The notes beneath the pieces are model-generated. The model had not been told where the DNA came from. It saw only the letters and a list, made by a program, of their open reading frames with translations, and did no database searches. Shown here in pieces: positions 14,785-63,650 of a stretch of 64,000 nt of DNA. The stretch's first letter is position 1. Every line of letters begins with the position of its first letter. The stretch is from the IMG/VR virus record IMGVR_UViG_3300050120_000230, positions 186,001 through 250,000 of that record; one strand, written 5' to 3'. Both the position numbers and the translations under genes were made by a program.

Positions 14785-14811
14785 GCGTTCACCCATCGGC
14801 AATACTGGGAG

Positions 14812-14836
14812 AGGCGGGGCATGTCCCCGCCTTTTC
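14812..14836 (+). terminator. intrinsic terminator
   Basis: AGGCGGGG-N5-CCCCGCCT followed by TTTCT. Confidence 0.8.
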
Positions 14837-14843
14837 TATTTGG

Positions 14844-14871
14844 TTGACGAGAATCACTTCTGGGGTAAACT
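14844..14871 (+). promoter_or_regulatory. early/host-type promoter
   Basis: TTGACG-N16-TAAACT. Confidence 0.65.
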
Positions 14872-14904: not shown

Positions 14905-15342
14905 ATGACCGAGCGCATGACTTTCACCACCGTCAATGGCTACAAGGCTTCCGCTGCGGATCAGGTCGATACCATCCGCAAGCTTCTCGAAGGCTTCGGC
15001 TCCATCGCCTACATGTCCGGCACGCGCGGCATCGAAATGAAGCTCGGCGCCGAAATCAACATGCGTCTGGCCATCCTTCACAATCTGTTCGCCCGCATGA
15101 CGGTCGCTGACCAGATCGACGAAGAAGAACTCGAAGGGAAGGGCGCGCGCATCGACCGCCTCGACAAGCAAGGCCGCGAAGTTCTCCGCGAAGAACTGGC
15201 CTTCATCGCCGGGACCGTCAACGACCCCTATCTCTACGCCTCGGAACCGGTCAACTACCAGCAGGCCGCCGTCATCAACCTCCACAAGGCCCGCGACATC
15301 CTCGCCTATCGTGTGGAACGCAACACGCGCGACCCGGCCTGA
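14905..15342 (+). CDS. hypothetical protein
   Basis: GGAGG RBS; 145 aa; strong codon bias. Confidence 0.75.
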   Translation: MTERMTFTTVNGYKASAADQVDTIRKLLEGFGSIAYMSGTRGIEMKLGAEINMRLAILHNLFARMTVADQIDEEELEGKGARIDRLDKQGREVLREELAFIAGTVNDPYLYASEPVNYQQAAVINLHKARDILAYRVERNTRDPA

Positions 15343-15524
15343 TGCGTCGCGAAGTCGTAACCGTGGGGGCGCTTTTGCGTCGTGGCTTCCGGCGAATGCT
15401 GGACCAAGAGGGTGTTTCCTATTCGGAAGACAGGGGGTTCCTCGACAGCCAGTTCATCGTCAAGGGTGAACCCGAGGCGATGGCCCGCGTCGAAAAGCGC
15501 ATCAAGGACACGCTCGGGAAATGA
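15342..15524 (+). CDS. small hypothetical protein
   Basis: TGATG coupling; 60 aa. Confidence 0.65.
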   Translation: MRREVVTVGALLRRGFRRMLDQEGVSYSEDRGFLDSQFIVKGEPEAMARVEKRIKDTLGK

Positions 15525-16090
15525 AGGCCATTTCCAAAGCCATCAAACGCGTTGAGGTAAAGGCCACCATCGAACGCAAGTATGAGGTGGTTCTCACGAA
15601 CAGCGAGAACCAGACCATTTGCGCGCTGCTGACCAATTCGCTCCGCGAGGCCCTCACCGAGGCAGCGGAGTGGGCCGACTTCTGTGGCATCGTTCTAACG
15701 CCGTATCGCGTCATGGGTAAGATCGTAGAGCCGGTCACCAAGGACACCTACAAGCAAACCACGCTCAAGACGTTCGCGCAGCTTCATGCGGAATATCGGA
15801 CGAGCGGTGGCGAACTGAATTGGAACAAGCTGATGCATTGGGAGTGGCAACGCTTCCGGGGCACCTACAAGGACAAGGAAGCCATGAAGTTGTGGCTCCT
15901 GCCGCATTTCATGGAGAGCAAGCCGCCGACGTTTGATGAGGCGGTGGCCCGTGCAGGGACCAAAGACTCCCCGGCCGTCGAATGGCTGAGCGCCAACGCC
16001 ACGGGCTCGTGGATGCCTTCCAAGGGCGGCTATCGGTTCTCCGATGATCGAGATGCCGCTCTGTTCAAACTGTTTTTCGCTGGAAACTAG
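15521..16090 (+). CDS. hypothetical protein, FKL-motif family
   Basis: ends YRFSDDRDAALFKLFFAGN. Confidence 0.7.
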   Translation: MKAISKAIKRVEVKATIERKYEVVLTNSENQTICALLTNSLREALTEAAEWADFCGIVLTPYRVMGKIVEPVTKDTYKQTTLKTFAQLHAEYRTSGGELNWNKLMHWEWQRFRGTYKDKEAMKLWLLPHFMESKPPTFDEAVARAGTKDSPAVEWLSANATGSWMPSKGGYRFSDDRDAALFKLFFAGN

Positions 16091-16099
16091 GAGGATCGC

Positions 16100-16489
16100 A
16101 TGTTCGAGATTCACGGCGAGGCCGATTCGAAAGTTCTCTACGATCTGTGCACCGAGCTTGGCGCGGATTACCGCAAGACCGCCGTCGTGCCGCTGGCGAG
16201 CGACATTGACACACGCATCGCCGCCGCACTGGCCGTGCCTGTGGCGCCCTACGCCAACTCCTTGGAAGCGGCTTTCGCGTTGAGGGACATCGTTTTCCCG
16301 AACGTCGAATATCTGAACGTGGATTTTCGCGAATATTTCTATGCGGATCACGGCATGTCCTATCATTGTGACGTGCGACATGAATACGGAGAAGGCTGCG
16401 GCCGGGGCTCCACCCGCGCCCGCGCGCTGGTGTGCGCTATCCTGATGCACGTCATCTATGCGTTGGATGAGCAACGGACTTCACGCTGA
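16100..16489 (+). CDS. hypothetical protein
   Basis: AGGAGG RBS; 129 aa. Confidence 0.7.
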   Translation: MFEIHGEADSKVLYDLCTELGADYRKTAVVPLASDIDTRIAAALAVPVAPYANSLEAAFALRDIVFPNVEYLNVDFREYFYADHGMSYHCDVRHEYGEGCGRGSTRARALVCAILMHVIYALDEQRTSR

Positions 16490-16911
16490 TGTTCTACGAG
16501 AAGGCCCTGCGTGGCCTCTCCATCGATGAGATGCAAAAGCTCATCAACATCATCGTAGCCGAAGGTCAGCGAAGCCAACCCCTCCTGACCGACTACGGGA
16601 AGATTACCAACGACGTTGTGTGGCTGCATAGCATCATGGGTATCGCGTTGCAGTTCACCTACCACAAGGGCAACGTGAACGTGCCGTCGTTCCGTCTAGA
16701 GGGTTCAGAGTGGGCGATCACTTTCAAAGGGTCGCGAAGCTCATCGCTGATGCCGCGCTTTCACGATTACATCGAAATCAGGATCGGGCCTCTGGAACGT
16801 ACCATGCGTCCGCCGCCCACCGCGACTAAGTTTTTCGCGCACCAATTTCGGCGGCGTGGTAAACTGTCGGACTTCAAGCACGACCTGACTTTGCTGAGGC
16901 TGACCCTGTGA
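16489..16911 (+). CDS. hypothetical protein
   Basis: TGATG coupling; ends SDFKHDLTLLRL, similar to the end of 9989..10528. Confidence 0.65.
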   Translation: MFYEKALRGLSIDEMQKLINIIVAEGQRSQPLLTDYGKITNDVVWLHSIMGIALQFTYHKGNVNVPSFRLEGSEWAITFKGSRSSSLMPRFHDYIEIRIGPLERTMRPPPTATKFFAHQFRRRGKLSDFKHDLTLLRLTL

Positions 16912-17207
16912 CCAGATATCGATTGAACATCGAAAGCGTAGCTCGTGTCGGCGGCTTCGTTGCGATGCTGTCTGTGTTTTTTATTTTGATGGGAACAACA
17001 CCGGAAGATAGTGTGCCGCCGTGGTGGGCCATCGCTCCCATGATCGTGTTGTTTTTGATGAGCGTCATCTATCTCTCTGGCGGCAACGCAGGCATGAAGT
17101 ATTTCGGAGACTGCCTCGCCAAGTTCTTCCTCATCAAGATCGAACCCGCCGATGAGATTTCCGAGATCGACGAGGATCGCTGCAAGGGCCGAGAGGTTCC
17201 AGATTGA
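16908..17207 (+). CDS. small membrane protein
   Basis: two hydrophobic helices. Confidence 0.6.
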   Translation: MTRYRLNIESVARVGGFVAMLSVFFILMGTTPEDSVPPWWAIAPMIVLFLMSVIYLSGGNAGMKYFGDCLAKFFLIKIEPADEISEIDEDRCKGREVPD

Positions 17208-17512
17208 AGCTCTTCCTCGACGATGAACGGTTTCCTCCGAACGATGGTGCGTTCTGGATCATCGTCAGAGACGTGGGCGAAGCCGTGACGTTGATGGAGC
17301 AGACCGGCTGTCCGGGTTTCCTGTCGTTCGATCATGATCTCGGGAAGAACGTCCCCACGGGTTATGATCTGGCTCACTGGATGGTTGAGCGAGACATGGA
17401 CCAAGATGGCAAGTTCATCCCCGCCAATTTTGAATACTACGTTCACAGTCAAAACCCACCGGGGGCCGCGAACATCAAGGCTTTGCTCGACAATTACTTG
17501 AAACAGCGGTAA
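17204..17512 (+). CDS. cyclic-phosphate-processing receiver-domain protein (cREC-like)
   Basis: KLFLDDER, LSFDHDLG, TGYD and VHSQNPPG motifs. Confidence 0.75.
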   Translation: MKLFLDDERFPPNDGAFWIIVRDVGEAVTLMEQTGCPGFLSFDHDLGKNVPTGYDLAHWMVERDMDQDGKFIPANFEYYVHSQNPPGAANIKALLDNYLKQR

Positions 17513-17538
17513 ATAGGGTCTCCACCAACGGAGAACCC
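17510..17538 (+). promoter_or_regulatory. TAAATA late promoter overlapping an RBS-sequestering hairpin
   Basis: TAAATA at 17510-17515; GGGTCTCC (17516-23) pairs with GGAGAACCC (17530-38). Confidence 0.6.
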
Positions 17539-17540
17539 CG

Positions 17541-17753
17541 ATGAAACAGAAGCAGCCGCGCAAGGCGCGGAACATGGTGGCGAAGGCAATGCACGAGTGC
17601 AAGCTGTTCGCCCCGAAAGCCATCCCCTCCAAAAAGGGCAAGGGCACCATCTACAACCGTAAGAGCCGGAACGCCAAAGAGCCTTCCGGCTCTTATTATT
17701 TTGGACTACTGGTTCGCTCCGACATATACTTTGGGCATGGCGTTTGCATTTAG
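17541..17753 (+). CDS. arfA: ArfA-like alternative ribosome-rescue factor
   Basis: RNMVAKAMH...LF...KKGKGTIYNRK aligns by eye with E. coli ArfA NAIEALLHDPLF...KKGKGSYMRK; 70 aa with hydrophobic tail. Confidence 0.7.
   Translation: MKQKQPRKARNMVAKAMHECKLFAPKAIPSKKGKGTIYNRKSRNAKEPSGSYYFGLLVRSDIYFGHGVCI
17660..17702 (+). terminator. intragenic intrinsic terminator within the arfA-like ORF
   Basis: AAGAGCC-TTCC-GGCTCTT plus ATTATTTT; alternative stem 17660-70/17685-95. Confidence 0.7.
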
Positions 17754-17916
17754 AAACTTCGTGATTGCTATCGGTTGCTTGGGCGTTGTGCTCGGCTTCG
17801 GCGGCATGATCGTGGATTGTTTCTTCAATGCCGTCTGGCCGGTCACCGCAGTGGGGTTCTTGCTTTGGTGGATCGCTGGCGAAACGCTCTGCAAAATAGA
17901 CGGAGACGAGGATTAA
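17737..17916 (+). CDS. small membrane protein, probably leaderless
   Basis: two TM helices; TTGGAC-N18-TATACT ends 6 nt before the ATG. Confidence 0.6.
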   Translation: MAFAFRNFVIAIGCLGVVLGFGGMIVDCFFNAVWPVTAVGFLLWWIAGETLCKIDGDED

Positions 17917-17917
17917 C

Positions 17918-18190
17918 ATGCCATCCATGGAACTAGATGCATCTGACATTCAATTGCTGGCCAAGGCCAAGCAAGGCCCCGTATATCGCGGGCTGTTCGG
18001 CTGGCCGATCAACTCGATGATCGGCCCCATGCGAATCCAACACATGGTAGACTACGGCTACCTGCAATTCATTTACGACTGGGGTAAGGATCGCCCGGCC
18101 GTCCGCATCACGTCGCTGGGAGACTGTCGCCTGCGAGAAGAGTTGGAGCGCGACGTGCAGATCGTTCGGGGCGTCGATATTCGCGTCTAA
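17918..18190 (+). CDS. hypothetical protein
   Basis: 90 aa; follows GAGGA. Confidence 0.65.
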   Translation: MPSMELDASDIQLLAKAKQGPVYRGLFGWPINSMIGPMRIQHMVDYGYLQFIYDWGKDRPAVRITSLGDCRLREELERDVQIVRGVDIRV

Positions 18191-18238
18191 GCGAAGAAAA
18201 ATATTGCAGCCCAATCTCGTATACCATATATTCAAATC

Positions 18239-22249: not shown

Positions 22250-22846
22250 ATGCGCTATCACGAGATCATCAGAGAAGACACCGCCGTAGACGGCTTGATG
22301 AGCTATTGGGACCTCGTGGATTACTATGATTTGAAGGACGCTGCCGACAAACTACACGACGCATCGCTTCCATGGATTAATCGTAATGCGACTTCAGCAA
22401 TCGCCCGGCTCGCCACCAACAAAAAGATGCGTCTGCTCTCAAAGTTGAAACTATTTTGCTCCCTAGAAGGTCCGCGCAGCTATAGCGACAAATGGACGAC
22501 CCCCGAGGTGTTCGAGCACGTCTTGCACCAGCCCGTGACCATGTGGCGCGGCGGTGGTGGGGTCTACGATCCCAATTATGCCTACCCTCTGCCGTGGACG
22601 AGTTTCACGGTGAAGGAAGCCCGTTCGGAAACATTTTCGAAATATGACGGCACCCGCGCAACGCGAACTTTCAGGCTGCCACTCCGCGATCAATATTGGA
22701 TAATCAAGCTGACGATTCCCCTCGACAGCATTTTGCTTTATCTGCCCCACGGCTCGGATGAAGAAGTGATCGTCAGCACAGAGATCGCACGCGCCGCCGA
22801 ACTCGTTACCCAGACCAATACCGGGATGGCCAATGAGGTATCGTGA
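22250..22846 (+). CDS. ADP-ribosyltransferase-like protein (R-S-E type)
   Basis: MWRG, WTSFT, SDEEVIV; starts MRYHEIIRED; TAAATA 4 nt upstream. Confidence 0.6.
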   Translation: MRYHEIIREDTAVDGLMSYWDLVDYYDLKDAADKLHDASLPWINRNATSAIARLATNKKMRLLSKLKLFCSLEGPRSYSDKWTTPEVFEHVLHQPVTMWRGGGGVYDPNYAYPLPWTSFTVKEARSETFSKYDGTRATRTFRLPLRDQYWIIKLTIPLDSILLYLPHGSDEEVIVSTEIARAAELVTQTNTGMANEVS

Positions 22847-29812: not shown

Positions 29813-30065
29813 AATCTATGTTCCCTTGGAAGTCGTTTTGGTTGATGGGGACGAGGAAGAATTTTTGAACGCCGCGTTGAGAGAAGTATGGGACGATGTG
29901 CGGTGGCGTTTCGTCGTAGACGAAAATTGGGAAAATAAAGGTGTGGTATTCAAAATACCCACAGAGAGTTGCGCGATCAAGCTGTTGTTGGTCGGTGGTA
30001 TGCGTGACGTTCCCAATGGGATGATAGTCGAAGAAACAATCCACGACTTGTCTACGAAAGATTAG
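29805..30065 (+). CDS. hypothetical protein (degenerate FKL-like)
   Basis: ATG at 29805 overlapping the upstream stop; VVFKIPTESCAIKLLL. Confidence 0.5.
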   Translation: MFEIYVPLEVVLVDGDEEEFLNAALREVWDDVRWRFVVDENWENKGVVFKIPTESCAIKLLLVGGMRDVPNGMIVEETIHDLSTKD

Positions 30066-30724
30066 ACGCTCTTGACGTGGGCTCGTCGGATCATCGCGTA
30101 GGTATCGGACACTTCTTTCATGTCTTTGTCGTCGTCGATGATGTGATATTCTTGGCGCTCGGGGTTACCGTATTTGTCGCCACGACGGCCGTCGTATCCA
30201 CCGCAAGAGATGTTGAAGCCGATACCTCGATCATCCCAGTTGTTCAGATGGGTGGTTCGCAGGCCACTGCGGCTAGGCTGATAGGCTCCGAGCGGAGAGT
30301 CTTCGCGCCCGGCGAAGAGTTCCTTGGCGGTGTTCAGGTCGATCACTTTACGAGCGAACGGACCCAGTGGGTCTTGTCTCGGGTTCTCTTTAGGCTCGTG
30401 GCCCTTGGCCCACTTCGTATAGGTGACTTGGAACTTTTGTTTGCGGAGTTCTGCGATCAACTGTCGCGCATCGGGTGCGGGTCGGAAGTCTCGAAAGTTT
30501 ACGTCCAAGATCAGTTCAGGGGCGTATTCCTTGTCAAAATCGTGGGCAATGTAGCTTTGCGCGAAGGGGGAGAACTTCCCACTTGCAAAAAACGCCTGTT
30601 CGCCTTGCAGAATGCCGCCAATTGCGTCGGCGTAGCTGTTCATCGCCTTCTCTGTTTTGTGCGCGCCGAGGCTCACTACGTCACCTTCGACGAGAAGCTT
30701 AACGATGTCGATCAGATCACGCAT
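30062..30724 (-). CDS. late protein with capsid-targeting-like N-terminus
   Basis: minus-strand TAAATA 30729-34, 4 nt upstream; starts MRDLIDIVKLLVEG. Confidence 0.75.
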   Translation of the reverse strand: MRDLIDIVKLLVEGDVVSLGAHKTEKAMNSYADAIGGILQGEQAFFASGKFSPFAQSYIAHDFDKEYAPELILDVNFRDFRPAPDARQLIAELRKQKFQVTYTKWAKGHEPKENPRQDPLGPFARKVIDLNTAKELFAGREDSPLGAYQPSRSGLRTTHLNNWDDRGIGFNISCGGYDGRRGDKYGNPERQEYHIIDDDKDMKEVSDTYAMIRRAHVKSV

Positions 30725-62513: not shown

Positions 62514-63650
62514 ATGCGTGAGTTCATCAATCTCCTAGAGCAAGCCGACAACGTCACGCTCTATCGCGGCGACAGCGGCCCTGTGGAGAAGTTCGAACTG
62601 GCCAAGACCGATTCAGGAGCTTTGCTCGGCATCGGCATCTATCTCACCGATAGCCCGGAAGTGGCTGGCGACTATACCGTCAAGGGTTCCCAAGACATCG
62701 CCTATCCGTCAGGGCGCCGGGGCGAAGACAATTCGTTCAACGATCCGAAGCAATTGACCGCTGGGTATCTGCGGAAACTCATGAACGATGCTGGTTTCCA
62801 ACAGCAAATGGACGACACGAAAAATCAGTGGCAGGACAAATATTACAGCCTGTCGCGAGATATCGATTGGACCGACCATGAACGTGCTCGTAAGGAGCGC
62901 GACGAAATGCAAGCCAAGTTCCAAGCGGACTATCAGGTCGTCCGATCCAAGATGATCCGCGCCGCCGTGGCCAAGGCCAAGGCACAGTTCAAGGCGATTC
63001 GACCGAACCTACGGATGGTCAAGCTGACCACTGGGGAATACATCTTCACGAAAGTTGGCCGGGCGGCCAGCATCGCGAAGTTTATCGTGCCTACGGCCTA
63101 CCTCGAACGATGCCTTCATGCTGAGCGGCCTCTGCCTGATGATCTTCTTCCGATCATGAAAGCGGCTTTCGCTCGTGTGGCTCATGACAAAAACCCCGAT
63201 CAAAAATGGGACCTACGGGTTCGGAATCCCAAGGGGAACAACGGCGACGAAGACATTGGCCTTTCATTCGATGAGTTCATCGCAGGCTTTCGTAAAGCGG
63301 GCGCTCGCTACGCGTGGACGGACGAAGTTCGTGGCGGCAAGGGTGAGAACCCTTCGCTCGACATCCTCTGGAACGGCACGCACAGCGGCTATCACGTCTT
63401 CCAGAACAAAGAAGCACAAGAGACCCTCATGCATGAACTCATGGCCATGGGCTACGTCGGCTACGCCTACGACGGCGGCGTTCGTCTAGCTGGCACCGGT
63501 GCTCGTGGTGGCGGTGGCATTCGTCACAACGCCTACGTTCTTTGGGACGAAAATGCCGTTCATTCTTTCCGCGTCGAGGGCGGCGGGGTGACTGATGACG
63601 AAGTCGGTGACTTGGAAAAAGGTATCAAGGCAGCAAAAGTCCTGCGTTAA
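62514..63650 (+). CDS. ADP-ribosyltransferase-like (polyvalent-protein ART type) late protein
   Basis: TLYRGD, GIGIYLTD..EVAGDY; starts MREFINLLE; TAAATA 4 nt upstream. Confidence 0.6.
   Translation: MREFINLLEQADNVTLYRGDSGPVEKFELAKTDSGALLGIGIYLTDSPEVAGDYTVKGSQDIAYPSGRRGEDNSFNDPKQLTAGYLRKLMNDAGFQQQMDDTKNQWQDKYYSLSRDIDWTDHERARKERDEMQAKFQADYQVVRSKMIRAAVAKAKAQFKAIRPNLRMVKLTTGEYIFTKVGRAASIAKFIVPTAYLERCLHAERPLPDDLLPIMKAAFARVAHDKNPDQKWDLRVRNPKGNNGDEDIGLSFDEFIAGFRKAGARYAWTDEVRGGKGENPSLDILWNGTHSGYHVFQNKEAQETLMHELMAMGYVGYAYDGGVRLAGTGARGGGGIRHNAYVLWDENAVHSFRVEGGGVTDDEVGDLEKGIKAAKVLR

What the first reader, a model, noticed from the sequence alone, without database searches (positions are those of the whole stretch)
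17510..17540. RBS-hiding hairpin released by a late promoter upstream of the arfA-like gene
Seen: GGGTCTCC (17516-23) pairs with GGAGAACCC (17530-38), burying the GGAG SD. TAAATA sits at 17510-15, so initiation ~6 nt later would delete most of the 5' arm. Established: T4 e and soc are silenced in long early transcripts by exactly this layout. Inference: ArfA-like protein is restricted to late infection, a second control layer on top of the non-stop switch.
Basis: partly seen in the sequence, partly recalled or inferred. Interest (0 to 1): 0.65.

Follow-up and report, generated by a model that had tools for sequence, protein, structure and literature searches.

The report
Promoter-bypassed RBS hairpin before phage arfA
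In a giant uncultured peat phage, a small ribosome-rescue (ArfA-like) gene is preceded by a hairpin that hides its ribosome-binding site. A conserved phage promoter sits so that its own transcripts should lack the hiding arm, a layout known from phage T4, though whether it acts "late" is unproven.

Summary
TAAATA lies at 17510-15. GGGTCTCC (17516-23) pairs with GGAGAACCC (17530-38) in 8 bp with one bulged A, burying the GGAG Shine-Dalgarno (SD) 7 nt before the ATG at 17541. The hairpin folds at -12.1 kcal/mol (z -3).

The promoter reading is well supported:
- TAAATA is invariant 30-36 nt upstream of the start in 10 of 11 homologous loci, including four where the upstream gene differs.
- In this 415-kb genome, 114 of 140 TAAATA sites are non-coding and most sit just upstream of gene starts.

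Transcripts starting 5-9 nt downstream (17520-17524) lose five to all eight arm bases. The predicted cost of opening SD..AUG falls from 9-13 to about 4-5 kcal/mol. Read-through RNA is expected from a sigma70-like promoter at 14844. SD occlusion in long but not short RNAs recurs across the family, using differently placed anti-SD segments.

Three parts are not supported:
- "Late" timing. TAAATA also heads the DNA polymerase and nrdA genes.
- A gp55 sigma in this 72%-complete record. A cultured relative does have one.
- A −35-less promoter. −35-like hexamers sit 17 nt upstream.

A terminating ribosome at the cREC stop codon (inside TAAATA) would also melt the hairpin, so translational coupling is a live rival. 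This is a new member of the T4 e/soc kind.

The parts
14844..14871 (+). Sigma70-like promoter (TTGACG-N16-TAAACT) just after a strong terminator (14806-14838). It heads the same-strand gene array 14905-17512 that runs into the arfA-like gene, and is the expected source of long read-through RNA.
   Evidence: member of the genome's tt(c/g)gTTGAC class. No TAAATA lies between it and 17510, and the only terminator-like site between them on the + strand is a weak 5-pair one at 16318-16331.
17204..17512 (+). cREC_REC (cyclic-phosphate-processing receiver) gene. Its TAA stop codon is the first half of TAAATA.
   Evidence: Pfam PF20274, 1.6e-24. It lies directly upstream of the arfA-like gene in 6 of 11 loci and nearby in 3 more.
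17487..17492 (+). TCGACA, a possible -35-like hexamer 17 nt upstream of TAAATA. It lies inside the cREC coding sequence (L-D-N), so its conservation may be due to coding alone.
   Evidence: The equivalent position is TTGAC(T/G/C) in L008, L004 and L010, TTGCAT in L011, and T(C/G)GACA in the cREC-adjacent loci.
17510..17515 (+). TAAATA, the core of a T4-late-like promoter.
   Evidence: Invariant in 10 of 11 homologous loci at 30-36 nt from the start. Genome-wide enrichment and positioning are shown.
17516..17523 (+). 5' arm of the hairpin (GGGTCTCC). CTCC is the anti-Shine-Dalgarno segment.
17520..17524 (+). Inferred window for the transcription start. T4 geometry puts +1 at 17521. A17524 is the only purine in the window, and it follows a C that is conserved in 9 of 10 homologous leaders.
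   Evidence: Inference (TATAAATA at -13 to -6; 48 genes with ATG at +5/+6; A at +8 in 21 of 38 leaders).
17530..17538 (+). 3' arm (GGAGAACCC). GGAG at 17530-33 is the Shine-Dalgarno sequence, and A17534 is bulged.
17541..17753 (+). ArfA-like ORF (70 codons as written). Only the first ~50 residues are conserved.
   Evidence: Pfam ArfA matches all 9 family members at E <= 0.01 (best 3.4e-6; the window protein scores 19 bits against a cut-off of 25.5). A family profile aligns to solved ArfA over the KKGKG core (E 0.03). Alignment.
17660..17702 (+). Strong hairpin (17660-17695) plus a U-rich tract inside the ORF. It would end the mRNA at about codon 52-53, giving an ArfA-type non-stop message, and also ends the upstream operon.
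   Evidence: -22.4 kcal/mol, z -5.14. Terminator scan. Conserved in all loci, with compensatory changes that alter the amino acids.

Best explanation
The arfA-like gene is the last cistron of a same-strand operon driven by a sigma70-like promoter at 14844, and it also has a dedicated internal promoter whose core is TAAATA at 17510-15. RNA reading through from upstream carries the complete 8-bp hairpin (-12 kcal/mol), which buries the GGAG Shine-Dalgarno. On that RNA, initiation at the ATG (17541) is poor, except when a ribosome finishing the cREC gene transiently opens the stem. RNA initiated at the TAAATA promoter starts at about 17520-17524. It therefore lacks five to all eight bases of the 5' arm, leaving the ribosome-binding site far more accessible. 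This is the T4 e/soc/49/I-TevI design. The holoenzyme that uses TAAATA is probably a T4-type gp55-like late sigma, as in the related phage Atu_ph07. The temporal class is inferred, not shown, and may be 'middle and late' or 'phage-specific' rather than strictly late. Shown here: the sequence elements, hairpin stability, conservation of TAAATA, genome-wide behaviour of the motif, and in-silico accessibility. Inferred: the start site, the timing, and the difference in translation.
For: (1) The hairpin is real and unusual: -12.1 kcal/mol, z -2.96, within the top 5% of SD leaders.

(2) TAAATA is conserved. It is invariant in 10 of 11 loci while the flanking leader diverges. This includes L004, L008, L010 and L011, where TAA is not the cREC stop codon. 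L010 and L011 carry the full TATAAATA. In about 36 kb of related loci, TAAATA occurs 12 times, and 9 of those are the arfA sites.

(3) The motif acts as a genome-wide signal. 114 of 140 sites are non-coding, with C or A at -1 in about 90%. 48 genes have their ATG 4-5 nt after the motif, and about 39 have an SD leader of 26-45 nt like this one.

(4) Geometry. The T4 late core lies at -13 to -6 (PMC1524935), which puts +1 at 17521. This genome's own leaderless genes give +5/+6.

(5) Accessibility. Opening SD..AUG costs 9.3-12.8 kcal/mol in RNAs that begin at or upstream of 17480 (7.5-12.0 with 5' ends at 17500-17516), against 4.3-5.5 for starts at 17520-17524.

(6) Family level. The median SD opening cost is 5.8 kcal/mol in long RNA and 1.9 in short RNA. 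Controls give 3.4 and 2.4 (p about 0.002; the family sequences are not independent). The anti-SD lies downstream of TAAATA in the window, L009, L032 and L004. In L002 and L007 it lies upstream of TAAATA (CCTCTCTC). Different sequences thus give the same outcome.

(7) Changes within the stem keep the pairing: U-A becomes U.G in L032, and U-A becomes G-C in L004.

(8) A read-through source exists: a promoter at 14844 with no strong terminator before 17677.

(9) The relative Atu_ph07 has a gp55-like sigma (2e-20). Its TAAATA is depleted genome-wide yet concentrated 20-39 nt upstream of starts.

(10) The T4 precedent is documented in PMC3014915.
Against: No transcript data exist: the only public run holding this DNA is the source metagenome.

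This site has G at the base before TAAATA. GTAAATA is not enriched in this genome (12 sites against about 28 expected from composition; 6 non-coding), although three other GTAAATA sites sit in exact leaderless geometry.

About two TAA-stop-plus-ATA coincidences are expected genome-wide by chance (my estimate).

If initiation is at 17520, the CUCC anti-SD is retained (-5.0 kcal/mol).

Short RNAs still cost about 4 kcal/mol to open.

A local SD hairpin is absent in L006, L002, L007 and L011. In L008 and L010 the anti-SD lies downstream of any plausible start.

Hairpins are not enriched in TAAATA leaders as a class (18% against 12% at -8 kcal/mol or better, p 0.42).

Against 'late' specifically: TAAATA also heads the DNA polymerase and nrdA genes, no gp55 is found in the record, and -35-like hexamers sit at N17.
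Confidence: 0.5

Rival explanations
1. The hairpin is a translational-coupling device. Its job is to make arfA-like translation depend on translation of the cREC gene. The cREC stop codon (17510-12) lies 4 nt before the 5' arm, so a terminating ribosome would unwind about 17516-17522 and free the SD. Under this reading the hairpin is not there to silence early RNA, and the promoter is a separate matter. This can coexist with the best explanation.
For: The stop codon sits inside TAAATA and the arm starts 4 nt later. cREC lies directly upstream, with a 28-33 nt gap, in 6 of 11 loci. In L002 and L007 the anti-SD CCTCTCTC lies in the last codons of cREC, again under a ribosome finishing that gene. 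The ribosome footprint and helicase reach of about +11 to +15 nt from the P site is established knowledge, not tested here.
Against: L004 and L008 have SD hairpins whose 5' arms begin about 31 and 21 nt after the upstream stop codon, beyond the reach of a terminating ribosome. Coupling does not explain why ATA after the stop, and TAAATA in non-cREC contexts, are invariant.
Confidence: 0.3
2. TAAATA here is the -10 element of a host-sigma70-type promoter (T(T/C/G)GACA-N17-TAAATA). The gene's own transcript would then be made early or constitutively, not late. The hairpin bypass still applies, but the claimed temporal restriction does not.
For: All ten loci carry a -35-like hexamer exactly 17 nt upstream: TTGACT, TTGACG and TTGACC in L008, L004 and L010, TTGCAT in L011, and TCGACA or TGGACA elsewhere. 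GG precedes TAAATA even where no coding constraint exists (L004, L008), as in this genome's sigma70-like class ((g)ggTAnnnT). A conserved C-purine at +8/+9 fits a sigma70-type start.
Against: TAAATA has A, not T, at the sixth position, which sigma70 normally requires. The genome's TTGAC class uses TAnnnT. In the window the -35 is TCGACA inside a conserved coding segment (LLDNY). Across the genome's TAAATA sites no -35 signal is seen.
Confidence: 0.25
3. The hairpin is incidental. A purine-rich SD and a pyrimidine-rich promoter-proximal segment pair by chance, with no regulatory consequence.
For: The class-wide test is negative. 2 of 200 shuffles fold as well. The hairpin is not conserved in about half the family. 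About 5% of ordinary leaders are equally stable.
Against: Pairing is preserved through substitutions in L032 and L004. Family-wide SD occlusion in long RNA exceeds controls. The stem is a -12 kcal/mol structure centred exactly on GGAG.
Confidence: 0.15

Closest known systems
T4 genes e (lysozyme), soc, 49 and I-TevI: RBS-sequestering hairpins bypassed by late promoters (Uzan & Miller 2010, PMC3014915)
   Same: The SD is buried in a stem in transcripts that read through from upstream. A TATAAATA-type promoter overlaps or abuts the DNA encoding the 5' strand of the stem. Its transcripts therefore lack that strand and are translatable.
   Different: Here the core is the 6-nt TAAATA, preceded by G. 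No late sigma was found in the record, and the timing is unknown. The promoter core contains the stop codon of the upstream gene, so ribosome-mediated unmasking is possible. The regulated gene is a ribosome-rescue factor whose mRNA is also non-stop. Nothing has been tested experimentally.
T4-type late promoters (gp55/gp33/gp45). Variants include CTAAATA in Aeromonas phage Aeh1 (Nolan et al. 2006, PMC1524935)
   Same: A single short A/T-rich element, (C/A)TAAATA, with no genome-wide -35. It heads virion structural genes. The cultured relative Atu_ph07 encodes a gp55 homologue and shows the same motif positioning.
   Different: In this genome the motif also heads the DNA polymerase and nrdA genes. 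About 48 genes start 4-5 nt after it, an apparently leaderless arrangement that Atu_ph07 lacks (I know of no description of it in T4). gp55 is not found in this incomplete record.
Bacterial arfA regulation: an intragenic hairpin or terminator gives a non-stop mRNA that is repressed by tmRNA (reviewed in PMC8012679)
   Same: A small basic protein with a KKGKG core, conserved only over about 50 residues, followed by a strong intragenic hairpin plus U tract at about codon 40-53.
   Different: It is phage-encoded, linked to a cREC RNA-repair-type gene, and has an additional 5' layer (promoter plus SD hairpin) that, to my knowledge, has not been described for bacterial arfA. The Pfam score is below the family cut-off.
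Translational coupling by unmasking of a sequestered RBS (for example the RNA phage MS2 coat-replicase/lysis genes)
   Same: The downstream SD is held in a stem that a ribosome on the upstream cistron would melt.
   Different: Here a promoter core coincides with the upstream stop codon, and hairpins persist in homologous loci that have no adjacent upstream stop.

Membership tests
T4 e/soc-type RBS occlusion relieved by an internal promoter | SD and/or AUG sequestered in a stable helix in read-through RNA | tested here: met
   The hairpin is -12.1 kcal/mol with GGAG in the 3' arm. Opening SD..AUG costs 9.3-12.8 kcal/mol in RNAs with 5' ends at or upstream of 17480. In silico only.
T4 e/soc-type RBS occlusion relieved by an internal promoter | The promoter is placed so that its transcripts lack the 5' strand of the helix | tested here: inconclusive
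   TAAATA abuts the 5' arm. The inferred start at 17520-17524 removes 4-8 of the 8 arm bases. The start site is not mapped.
T4 e/soc-type RBS occlusion relieved by an internal promoter | Upstream transcription reads through the region | tested here: met
   A sigma70-like promoter lies at 14844-14871. The genes are tightly packed on the same strand, and there is no strong terminator before 17677. Prediction only.
T4 e/soc-type RBS occlusion relieved by an internal promoter | Long RNA is poorly translated and short RNA is well translated | not testable with these tools
   Needs reporter fusions or toeprinting.
T4-type (gp55-dependent) late promoter | TATAAATA-like core | tested here: met
   TAAATA is present and invariant in homologues. 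The full TATAAATA is present only in L010 and L011. The window has GG-TAAATA, a minority variant in this genome.
T4-type (gp55-dependent) late promoter | The phage encodes the late sigma gp55 (and gp33) | tested here: inconclusive
   There was no hit with T4 gp55, Atu_ph07 gp55-like, phrog_234 or phrog_12791 in the 415-kb record. The record is about 72% complete, and the gp47-like gene that neighbours gp55 in Atu_ph07 is missing too. Atu_ph07 has gp55-like. gp33 was not searched for.
T4-type (gp55-dependent) late promoter | Drives late (virion) genes and not early or replication genes | tested here: not met
   TAAATA heads virion structural and tail-fibre genes, but also the family-B DNA polymerase and nrdA.
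T4-type (gp55-dependent) late promoter | No -35 element | tested here: inconclusive
   No -35 signal is seen across the genome's TAAATA sites. All arfA-linked sites, however, have a -35-like hexamer at N17.
ArfA (PF03889) | Sequence match to the family model | tested here: inconclusive
   The window protein scores 19 bits (E 9.6e-4), below the 25.5 cut-off. All 9 family members match at E <= 0.01, the best at 3.4e-6. A family profile matches solved ArfA at E 0.03 over the KKGKG core.
ArfA (PF03889) | Non-stop mRNA architecture (an intragenic hairpin or terminator that truncates the message) | tested here: met
   A hairpin of -22.4 kcal/mol plus a U tract lies at 17660-17702. It is conserved with compensatory changes, and protein conservation ends there.
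ArfA (PF03889) | Recruits RF2 to stalled ribosomes | not testable with these tools
   Biochemical assay needed.
Translational coupling by RBS unmasking | The upstream stop codon lies within ribosome reach of the occluding strand | tested here: met
   The stop is at 17510-12 and the arm begins at 17516. This is not so in L004 and L008.

The most novel reading that the evidence does not exclude
A lineage of uncultured soil and peat megaphages (relatives of Atu_ph07) carries a conserved RNA-damage-response module: a cREC gene plus an ArfA-like ribosome-rescue gene. On this reading the rescue factor is under three stacked controls: a dedicated TAAATA promoter, SD occlusion that is relieved either by that promoter or by cREC-terminating ribosomes, and a non-stop mRNA that senses tmRNA capacity. 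In the same phage, the TAAATA promoter class would produce some 48 truly leaderless mRNAs, a mode of late gene expression that I know of no report of for T4-related phages.
Probability: 0.3. Interest if true: 0.65.

Novelty: new member of a known kind. Interest (0 to 1): 0.45.

Why it matters
If the layout works as inferred, the T4 trick of hiding a ribosome-binding site from read-through RNA and exposing it from an internal promoter has been reused in very distant giant phages. Here it would time or gate a ribosome-rescue factor rather than a lysis or capsid gene. That would place phage control of host ribosome rescue, probably a counter to RNA-cleaving defences given the linked cREC gene, under layered regulation. 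It would also give a concrete, testable handle on transcription signals in uncultured megaphages. The TAAATA motif analysis yields about 100 candidate promoters for this genome, including an unexpected leaderless class.

Tried and rejected
- No DNA or protein match to the region in the 50,697 phage records. No relatives in IMG/VR viral contigs by single-protein or profile patterns.
- RNA evidence: the only run holding the DNA is the source peat metagenome, and there is no RNA run.
- Rfam gave no match in 17000-18200 at E <= 1.
- I tested whether hairpins straddling the start site are a general property of this genome's TAAATA leaders and rejected the idea: 18% against 12% at -8 kcal/mol or better (p 0.42), and Mann-Whitney p 0.86.
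- The canonical TATAAATA is not enriched in the genome: 3 sites against about 5 expected.
- The hairpin is not an intrinsic terminator of the upstream operon. It has no U tract and was not called by the terminator scan.
- Searches for gp55, sigma70 region 2, and RNAP beta and beta' in the record were all negative. Because the record is a fragment, this counts as no evidence either way.
- The 569-kb relative (L002's contig) could not be searched as a whole.
- Atu_ph07 has no arfA-like gene, no leaderless TAAATA class, and no TAAATA upstream of its DNA polymerase gene.
- A formal covariation count on the MAFFT leader alignment (A2) was not run, because the loops are misaligned. The pairs were compared by eye and by folding.

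Full report
**Context**

The window is bases 186001-250000 of a single 415,409-bp, 55% GC virus record. The record is from IMG/VR, is linear, and is estimated to be 72% complete. Its only public DNA holder is a peat metagenome.

Its family-B DNA polymerase is 52% identical to those of the jumbo myoviruses Sinorhizobium phage Phosso and Agrobacterium phage Atu_ph07. More distant hits are GAP32- and CBB-like phages. The record encodes 52 tRNAs and no tmRNA.

**The observation**

- TAAATA at 17510-15.
- GGGTCTCC at 17516-23, loop ACCAAC, and GGAGAACCC at 17530-38 with A17534 bulged.
- GGAG 7 nt before the ATG at 17541.

The stem-loop folds at -12.1 kcal/mol, with z -2.96 and 2 of 200 shuffles as good. 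Only 4.7% of 106 SD-led control leaders in this genome are that stable.

The TAA of TAAATA is the stop codon of a 102-aa cREC_REC gene (Pfam 1.6e-24).

The downstream ORF is ArfA-like:
- All nine family members hit Pfam ArfA and essentially nothing else. The best E-value is 3.4e-6. The window protein scores 19 bits, below the 25.5 cut-off.
- A family profile aligns to solved ArfA chains across the KKGKG core.
- Conservation stops at about residue 50, where a -22.4 kcal/mol hairpin plus U tract sits inside the ORF.

**Is TAAATA a promoter?**

Genome-wide evidence:
- The canonical TATAAATA is not enriched: 3 sites against about 5 expected.
- TAAATA occurs 140 times, and 114 of those are in the ~24% of the genome that my crude gene caller left non-coding.
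- The preceding base is C (about 50%) or A (about 40%), and no -35 signal appears.
- CTAAATA and ATAAATA are 2.4-2.5-fold over expectation. GTAAATA, the form at this site, is not: 12 sites against about 28 expected.
- The sites fall into two geometric classes. In 48 genes the ATG or GTG lies exactly 4-5 nt after the motif with no SD. In about 39 genes there is an SD leader of 26-45 nt, as here (31 nt from the T of TAAATA).
- Motif-headed genes include a 2,495-aa virion structural protein, a tail-fibre protein and other structural proteins. They also include the DNA polymerase and nrdA.

Comparative evidence is stronger. The word search found eight homologues, and a metagenome scan found two more loci. 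In 10 of 11 loci, TAAATA is invariant 30-36 nt upstream of the start, while the leader between it and the SD diverges freely.

This holds in L004 and L008, where the upstream gene is a different one. It also holds in L010 and L011, where the upstream genes are divergent. L010 and L011 even carry the full TATAAATA.

In about 36 kb of these loci the hexamer occurs only 12 times. Nine are the arfA sites and two more precede other genes. In the five cREC-adjacent loci, plus L032, the non-coding ATA after the stop codon is invariant although the next bases vary.

I therefore put the probability that this is a functional promoter core at roughly 0.75-0.8. Offsetting that, I estimate about two TAA-stop-plus-ATA coincidences per genome by chance, and the G at -1 is a minority variant. 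Three other GTAAATA sites do sit in exact leaderless geometry.

**Where would transcription start, and what would remain of the arm?**

In T4 the late core spans -13 to -6 (PMC1524935). That puts +1 at 17521. This genome's leaderless genes put the A of the ATG at the 5th or 6th base after TAAATA (21 and 27 genes), which corresponds to 17520 or 17521.

Leader-class sites show A at the 8th base in 21 of 38 cases (p 4e-4) and CA at positions 7/8 in 8 of 38. The arfA leaders conserve C-purine at positions 8/9 in 9 of 10 loci. A17524 is the only purine in the candidate window.

The effect of each start site on the hairpin:

| Start | What remains of the arm | Fold of the shortened leader |
|---|---|---|
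| 17520 | CUCC, paired to GGAG | -5.0 kcal/mol |
| 17521 | UCC | -3.0 kcal/mol (from an unrelated weak CGG:CCG pairing) |
| 17524 | nothing | -3.0 kcal/mol (same unrelated pairing) |

Opening SD..AUG costs 9.3-12.8 kcal/mol in RNAs whose 5' end lies at or upstream of 17480. It costs 7.5-12.0 with 5' ends at 17500-17516, and 4.3-5.5 for starts at 17520-17524.

**Is there read-through RNA?**

A strong terminator at 14806-14838 is followed by TTGACG-N16-TAAACT at 14844-14871. This promoter belongs to the genome's abundant tt(c/g)gTTGAC...TAnnnT class.

Eight tightly packed same-strand genes then run to 17512. There is no intervening TAAATA and no strong terminator until the arfA-internal one at 17677. 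Long transcripts carrying the intact hairpin are therefore expected.

**Is the occlusion conserved?**

Not as one structure:
- The window, L009 and L032 share the 5' arm. L032 changes a U-A pair to U.G.
- L004 has GCUCC:GGAGC, a U-A to G-C change relative to the window (-8.7 kcal/mol, z -3.6).
- In L002 and L007 the anti-SD CCTCTCTC lies upstream of TAAATA, in the last cREC codons.
- In L008 and L010 a weak anti-SD lies downstream of any plausible start.
- L006 has none.

As a family, the cost of opening the SD is a median 5.8 kcal/mol in long RNA and 1.9 in RNA starting at +9. For 108 control genes the values are 3.4 and 2.4. Mann-Whitney p is about 0.002 for both the long value and the difference, but the family sequences are related, so the effective sample is about six.

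Hairpins are not a general attribute of TAAATA leaders in this genome. The feature therefore belongs to this gene family rather than to the promoter class.

**Late or not?**

For a T4-like late system:
- The motif resembles the T4 late core.
- Structural genes carry it.
- Atu_ph07 encodes a gp55 homologue (phrog_234, 2e-20) next to a gp47-like gene.
- In Atu_ph07, TAAATA is 2-3-fold depleted relative to same-composition hexamers. Yet 33% of sites lie within 80 nt upstream of ORF starts, peaking at 20-39 nt, against 8-11% for five same-composition control hexamers and 16% for ATAAAT, which overlaps the motif.

Against it, or untested:
- No gp55, sigma70-r2 or RNAP beta/beta' is detectable in this record. 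The gp47-like neighbour is also absent, which is consistent with that module lying in the missing ~28%.
- The DNA polymerase and nrdA genes carry the motif.
- Every arfA-linked site has a -35-like hexamer exactly 17 nt upstream: TTGAC in L004, L008 and L010, TTGCAT in L011, and T(C/G)GACA within cREC codons elsewhere. Host sigma70 holoenzyme might therefore use these sites.

**Rival: translational coupling**

A ribosome terminating at 17510-12 should unwind roughly through 17520-22, given the established helicase and footprint reach. This would transiently free the SD on long RNA.

This fits the six loci where cREC is immediately upstream, including L002 and L007. It does not fit L004 and L008, where the arm begins more than 20 nt past the upstream stop. 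The two mechanisms are compatible, and both may operate.

**Verdict**

- The layout matches the documented T4 e/soc/49/I-TevI design (PMC3014915) in anatomy and in predicted energetics, and the promoter element is strongly conserved.
- The start site, the timing and the translational consequence are inferred.
- I file this as a new member of a known kind of control, with about 0.5 confidence in the mechanism and lower confidence (about 0.35) in the "late-only" clause.

Noticed in passing
Genome-wide. In the window: TAAATA 26505 -> ATG 26516; 62504 -> 62514; 22240 -> 22250; 20864 -> 20875; 10771 -> 10781; 34184 -> 34195; 63655 -> 63665; minus strand 30734 -> 30724: 48 genes have their ATG or GTG exactly 4-5 nt after TAAATA with no Shine-Dalgarno. 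This implies leaderless mRNAs from this promoter class. The cultured relative Atu_ph07 lacks the class.
   Followed up: partly
window 22250-22846, 62514-63650, 30062-30724 (-), and about 10 more in the genome: An apparent family of genes shares the promoter-start block TAAATAtcggATGCG and N-termini of the form MR(D/E/Y)(F/L/H)(I/E)... There is no Pfam match. I judged them paralogous from the N-termini only and did not test this by alignment.
   Followed up: partly
window 14844-14871 and dozens of further sites genome-wide: A second, sigma70-like promoter class has an extended -35, tt(c/g)gTTGAC(c/g)aaa, and a (g)gTAnnnT -10. Of 337 GTTGAC sites, 102 are non-coding and many fit this form. One copy drives a tRNA cluster.
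   Followed up: partly
window 17204-17753; loci L002, L004, L006-L009, L011, L032: A cREC_REC gene (predicted to process 2',3'-cyclic phosphates; PMC7824862) is linked to the arfA-like gene in 9 of 11 loci. This suggests an RNA-damage and ribosome-rescue module.
   Followed up: partly
window 17660-17702: The arfA-internal hairpin (-22.4 kcal/mol, z -5.1) plus U tract is conserved with compensatory base changes that alter the encoded residues (for example E-P-S-G-S becomes G-P-P-G-L). The RNA structure, not the peptide, is therefore what selection preserves.
   Followed up: partly
genome 373385-373472 (outside the window): A tRNA with anticodon CUA, which would read UAG, is among 52 tRNAs. No tmRNA is present in the record. 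No recoding was assumed or tested.
   Followed up: no
genome 67224-67259 (outside the window): A 36-bp divergent intergenic region holds two opposed TAAATA motifs. One heads the family-B DNA polymerase gene and the other heads the divergent neighbour.
   Followed up: no
window 17701-17916: A small hydrophobic ORF (71 aa) overlaps the untranslated tail of the arfA-like ORF. A sigma70-like match (TGGACT-N17-TATACT) lies at 17702-17730.
   Followed up: no
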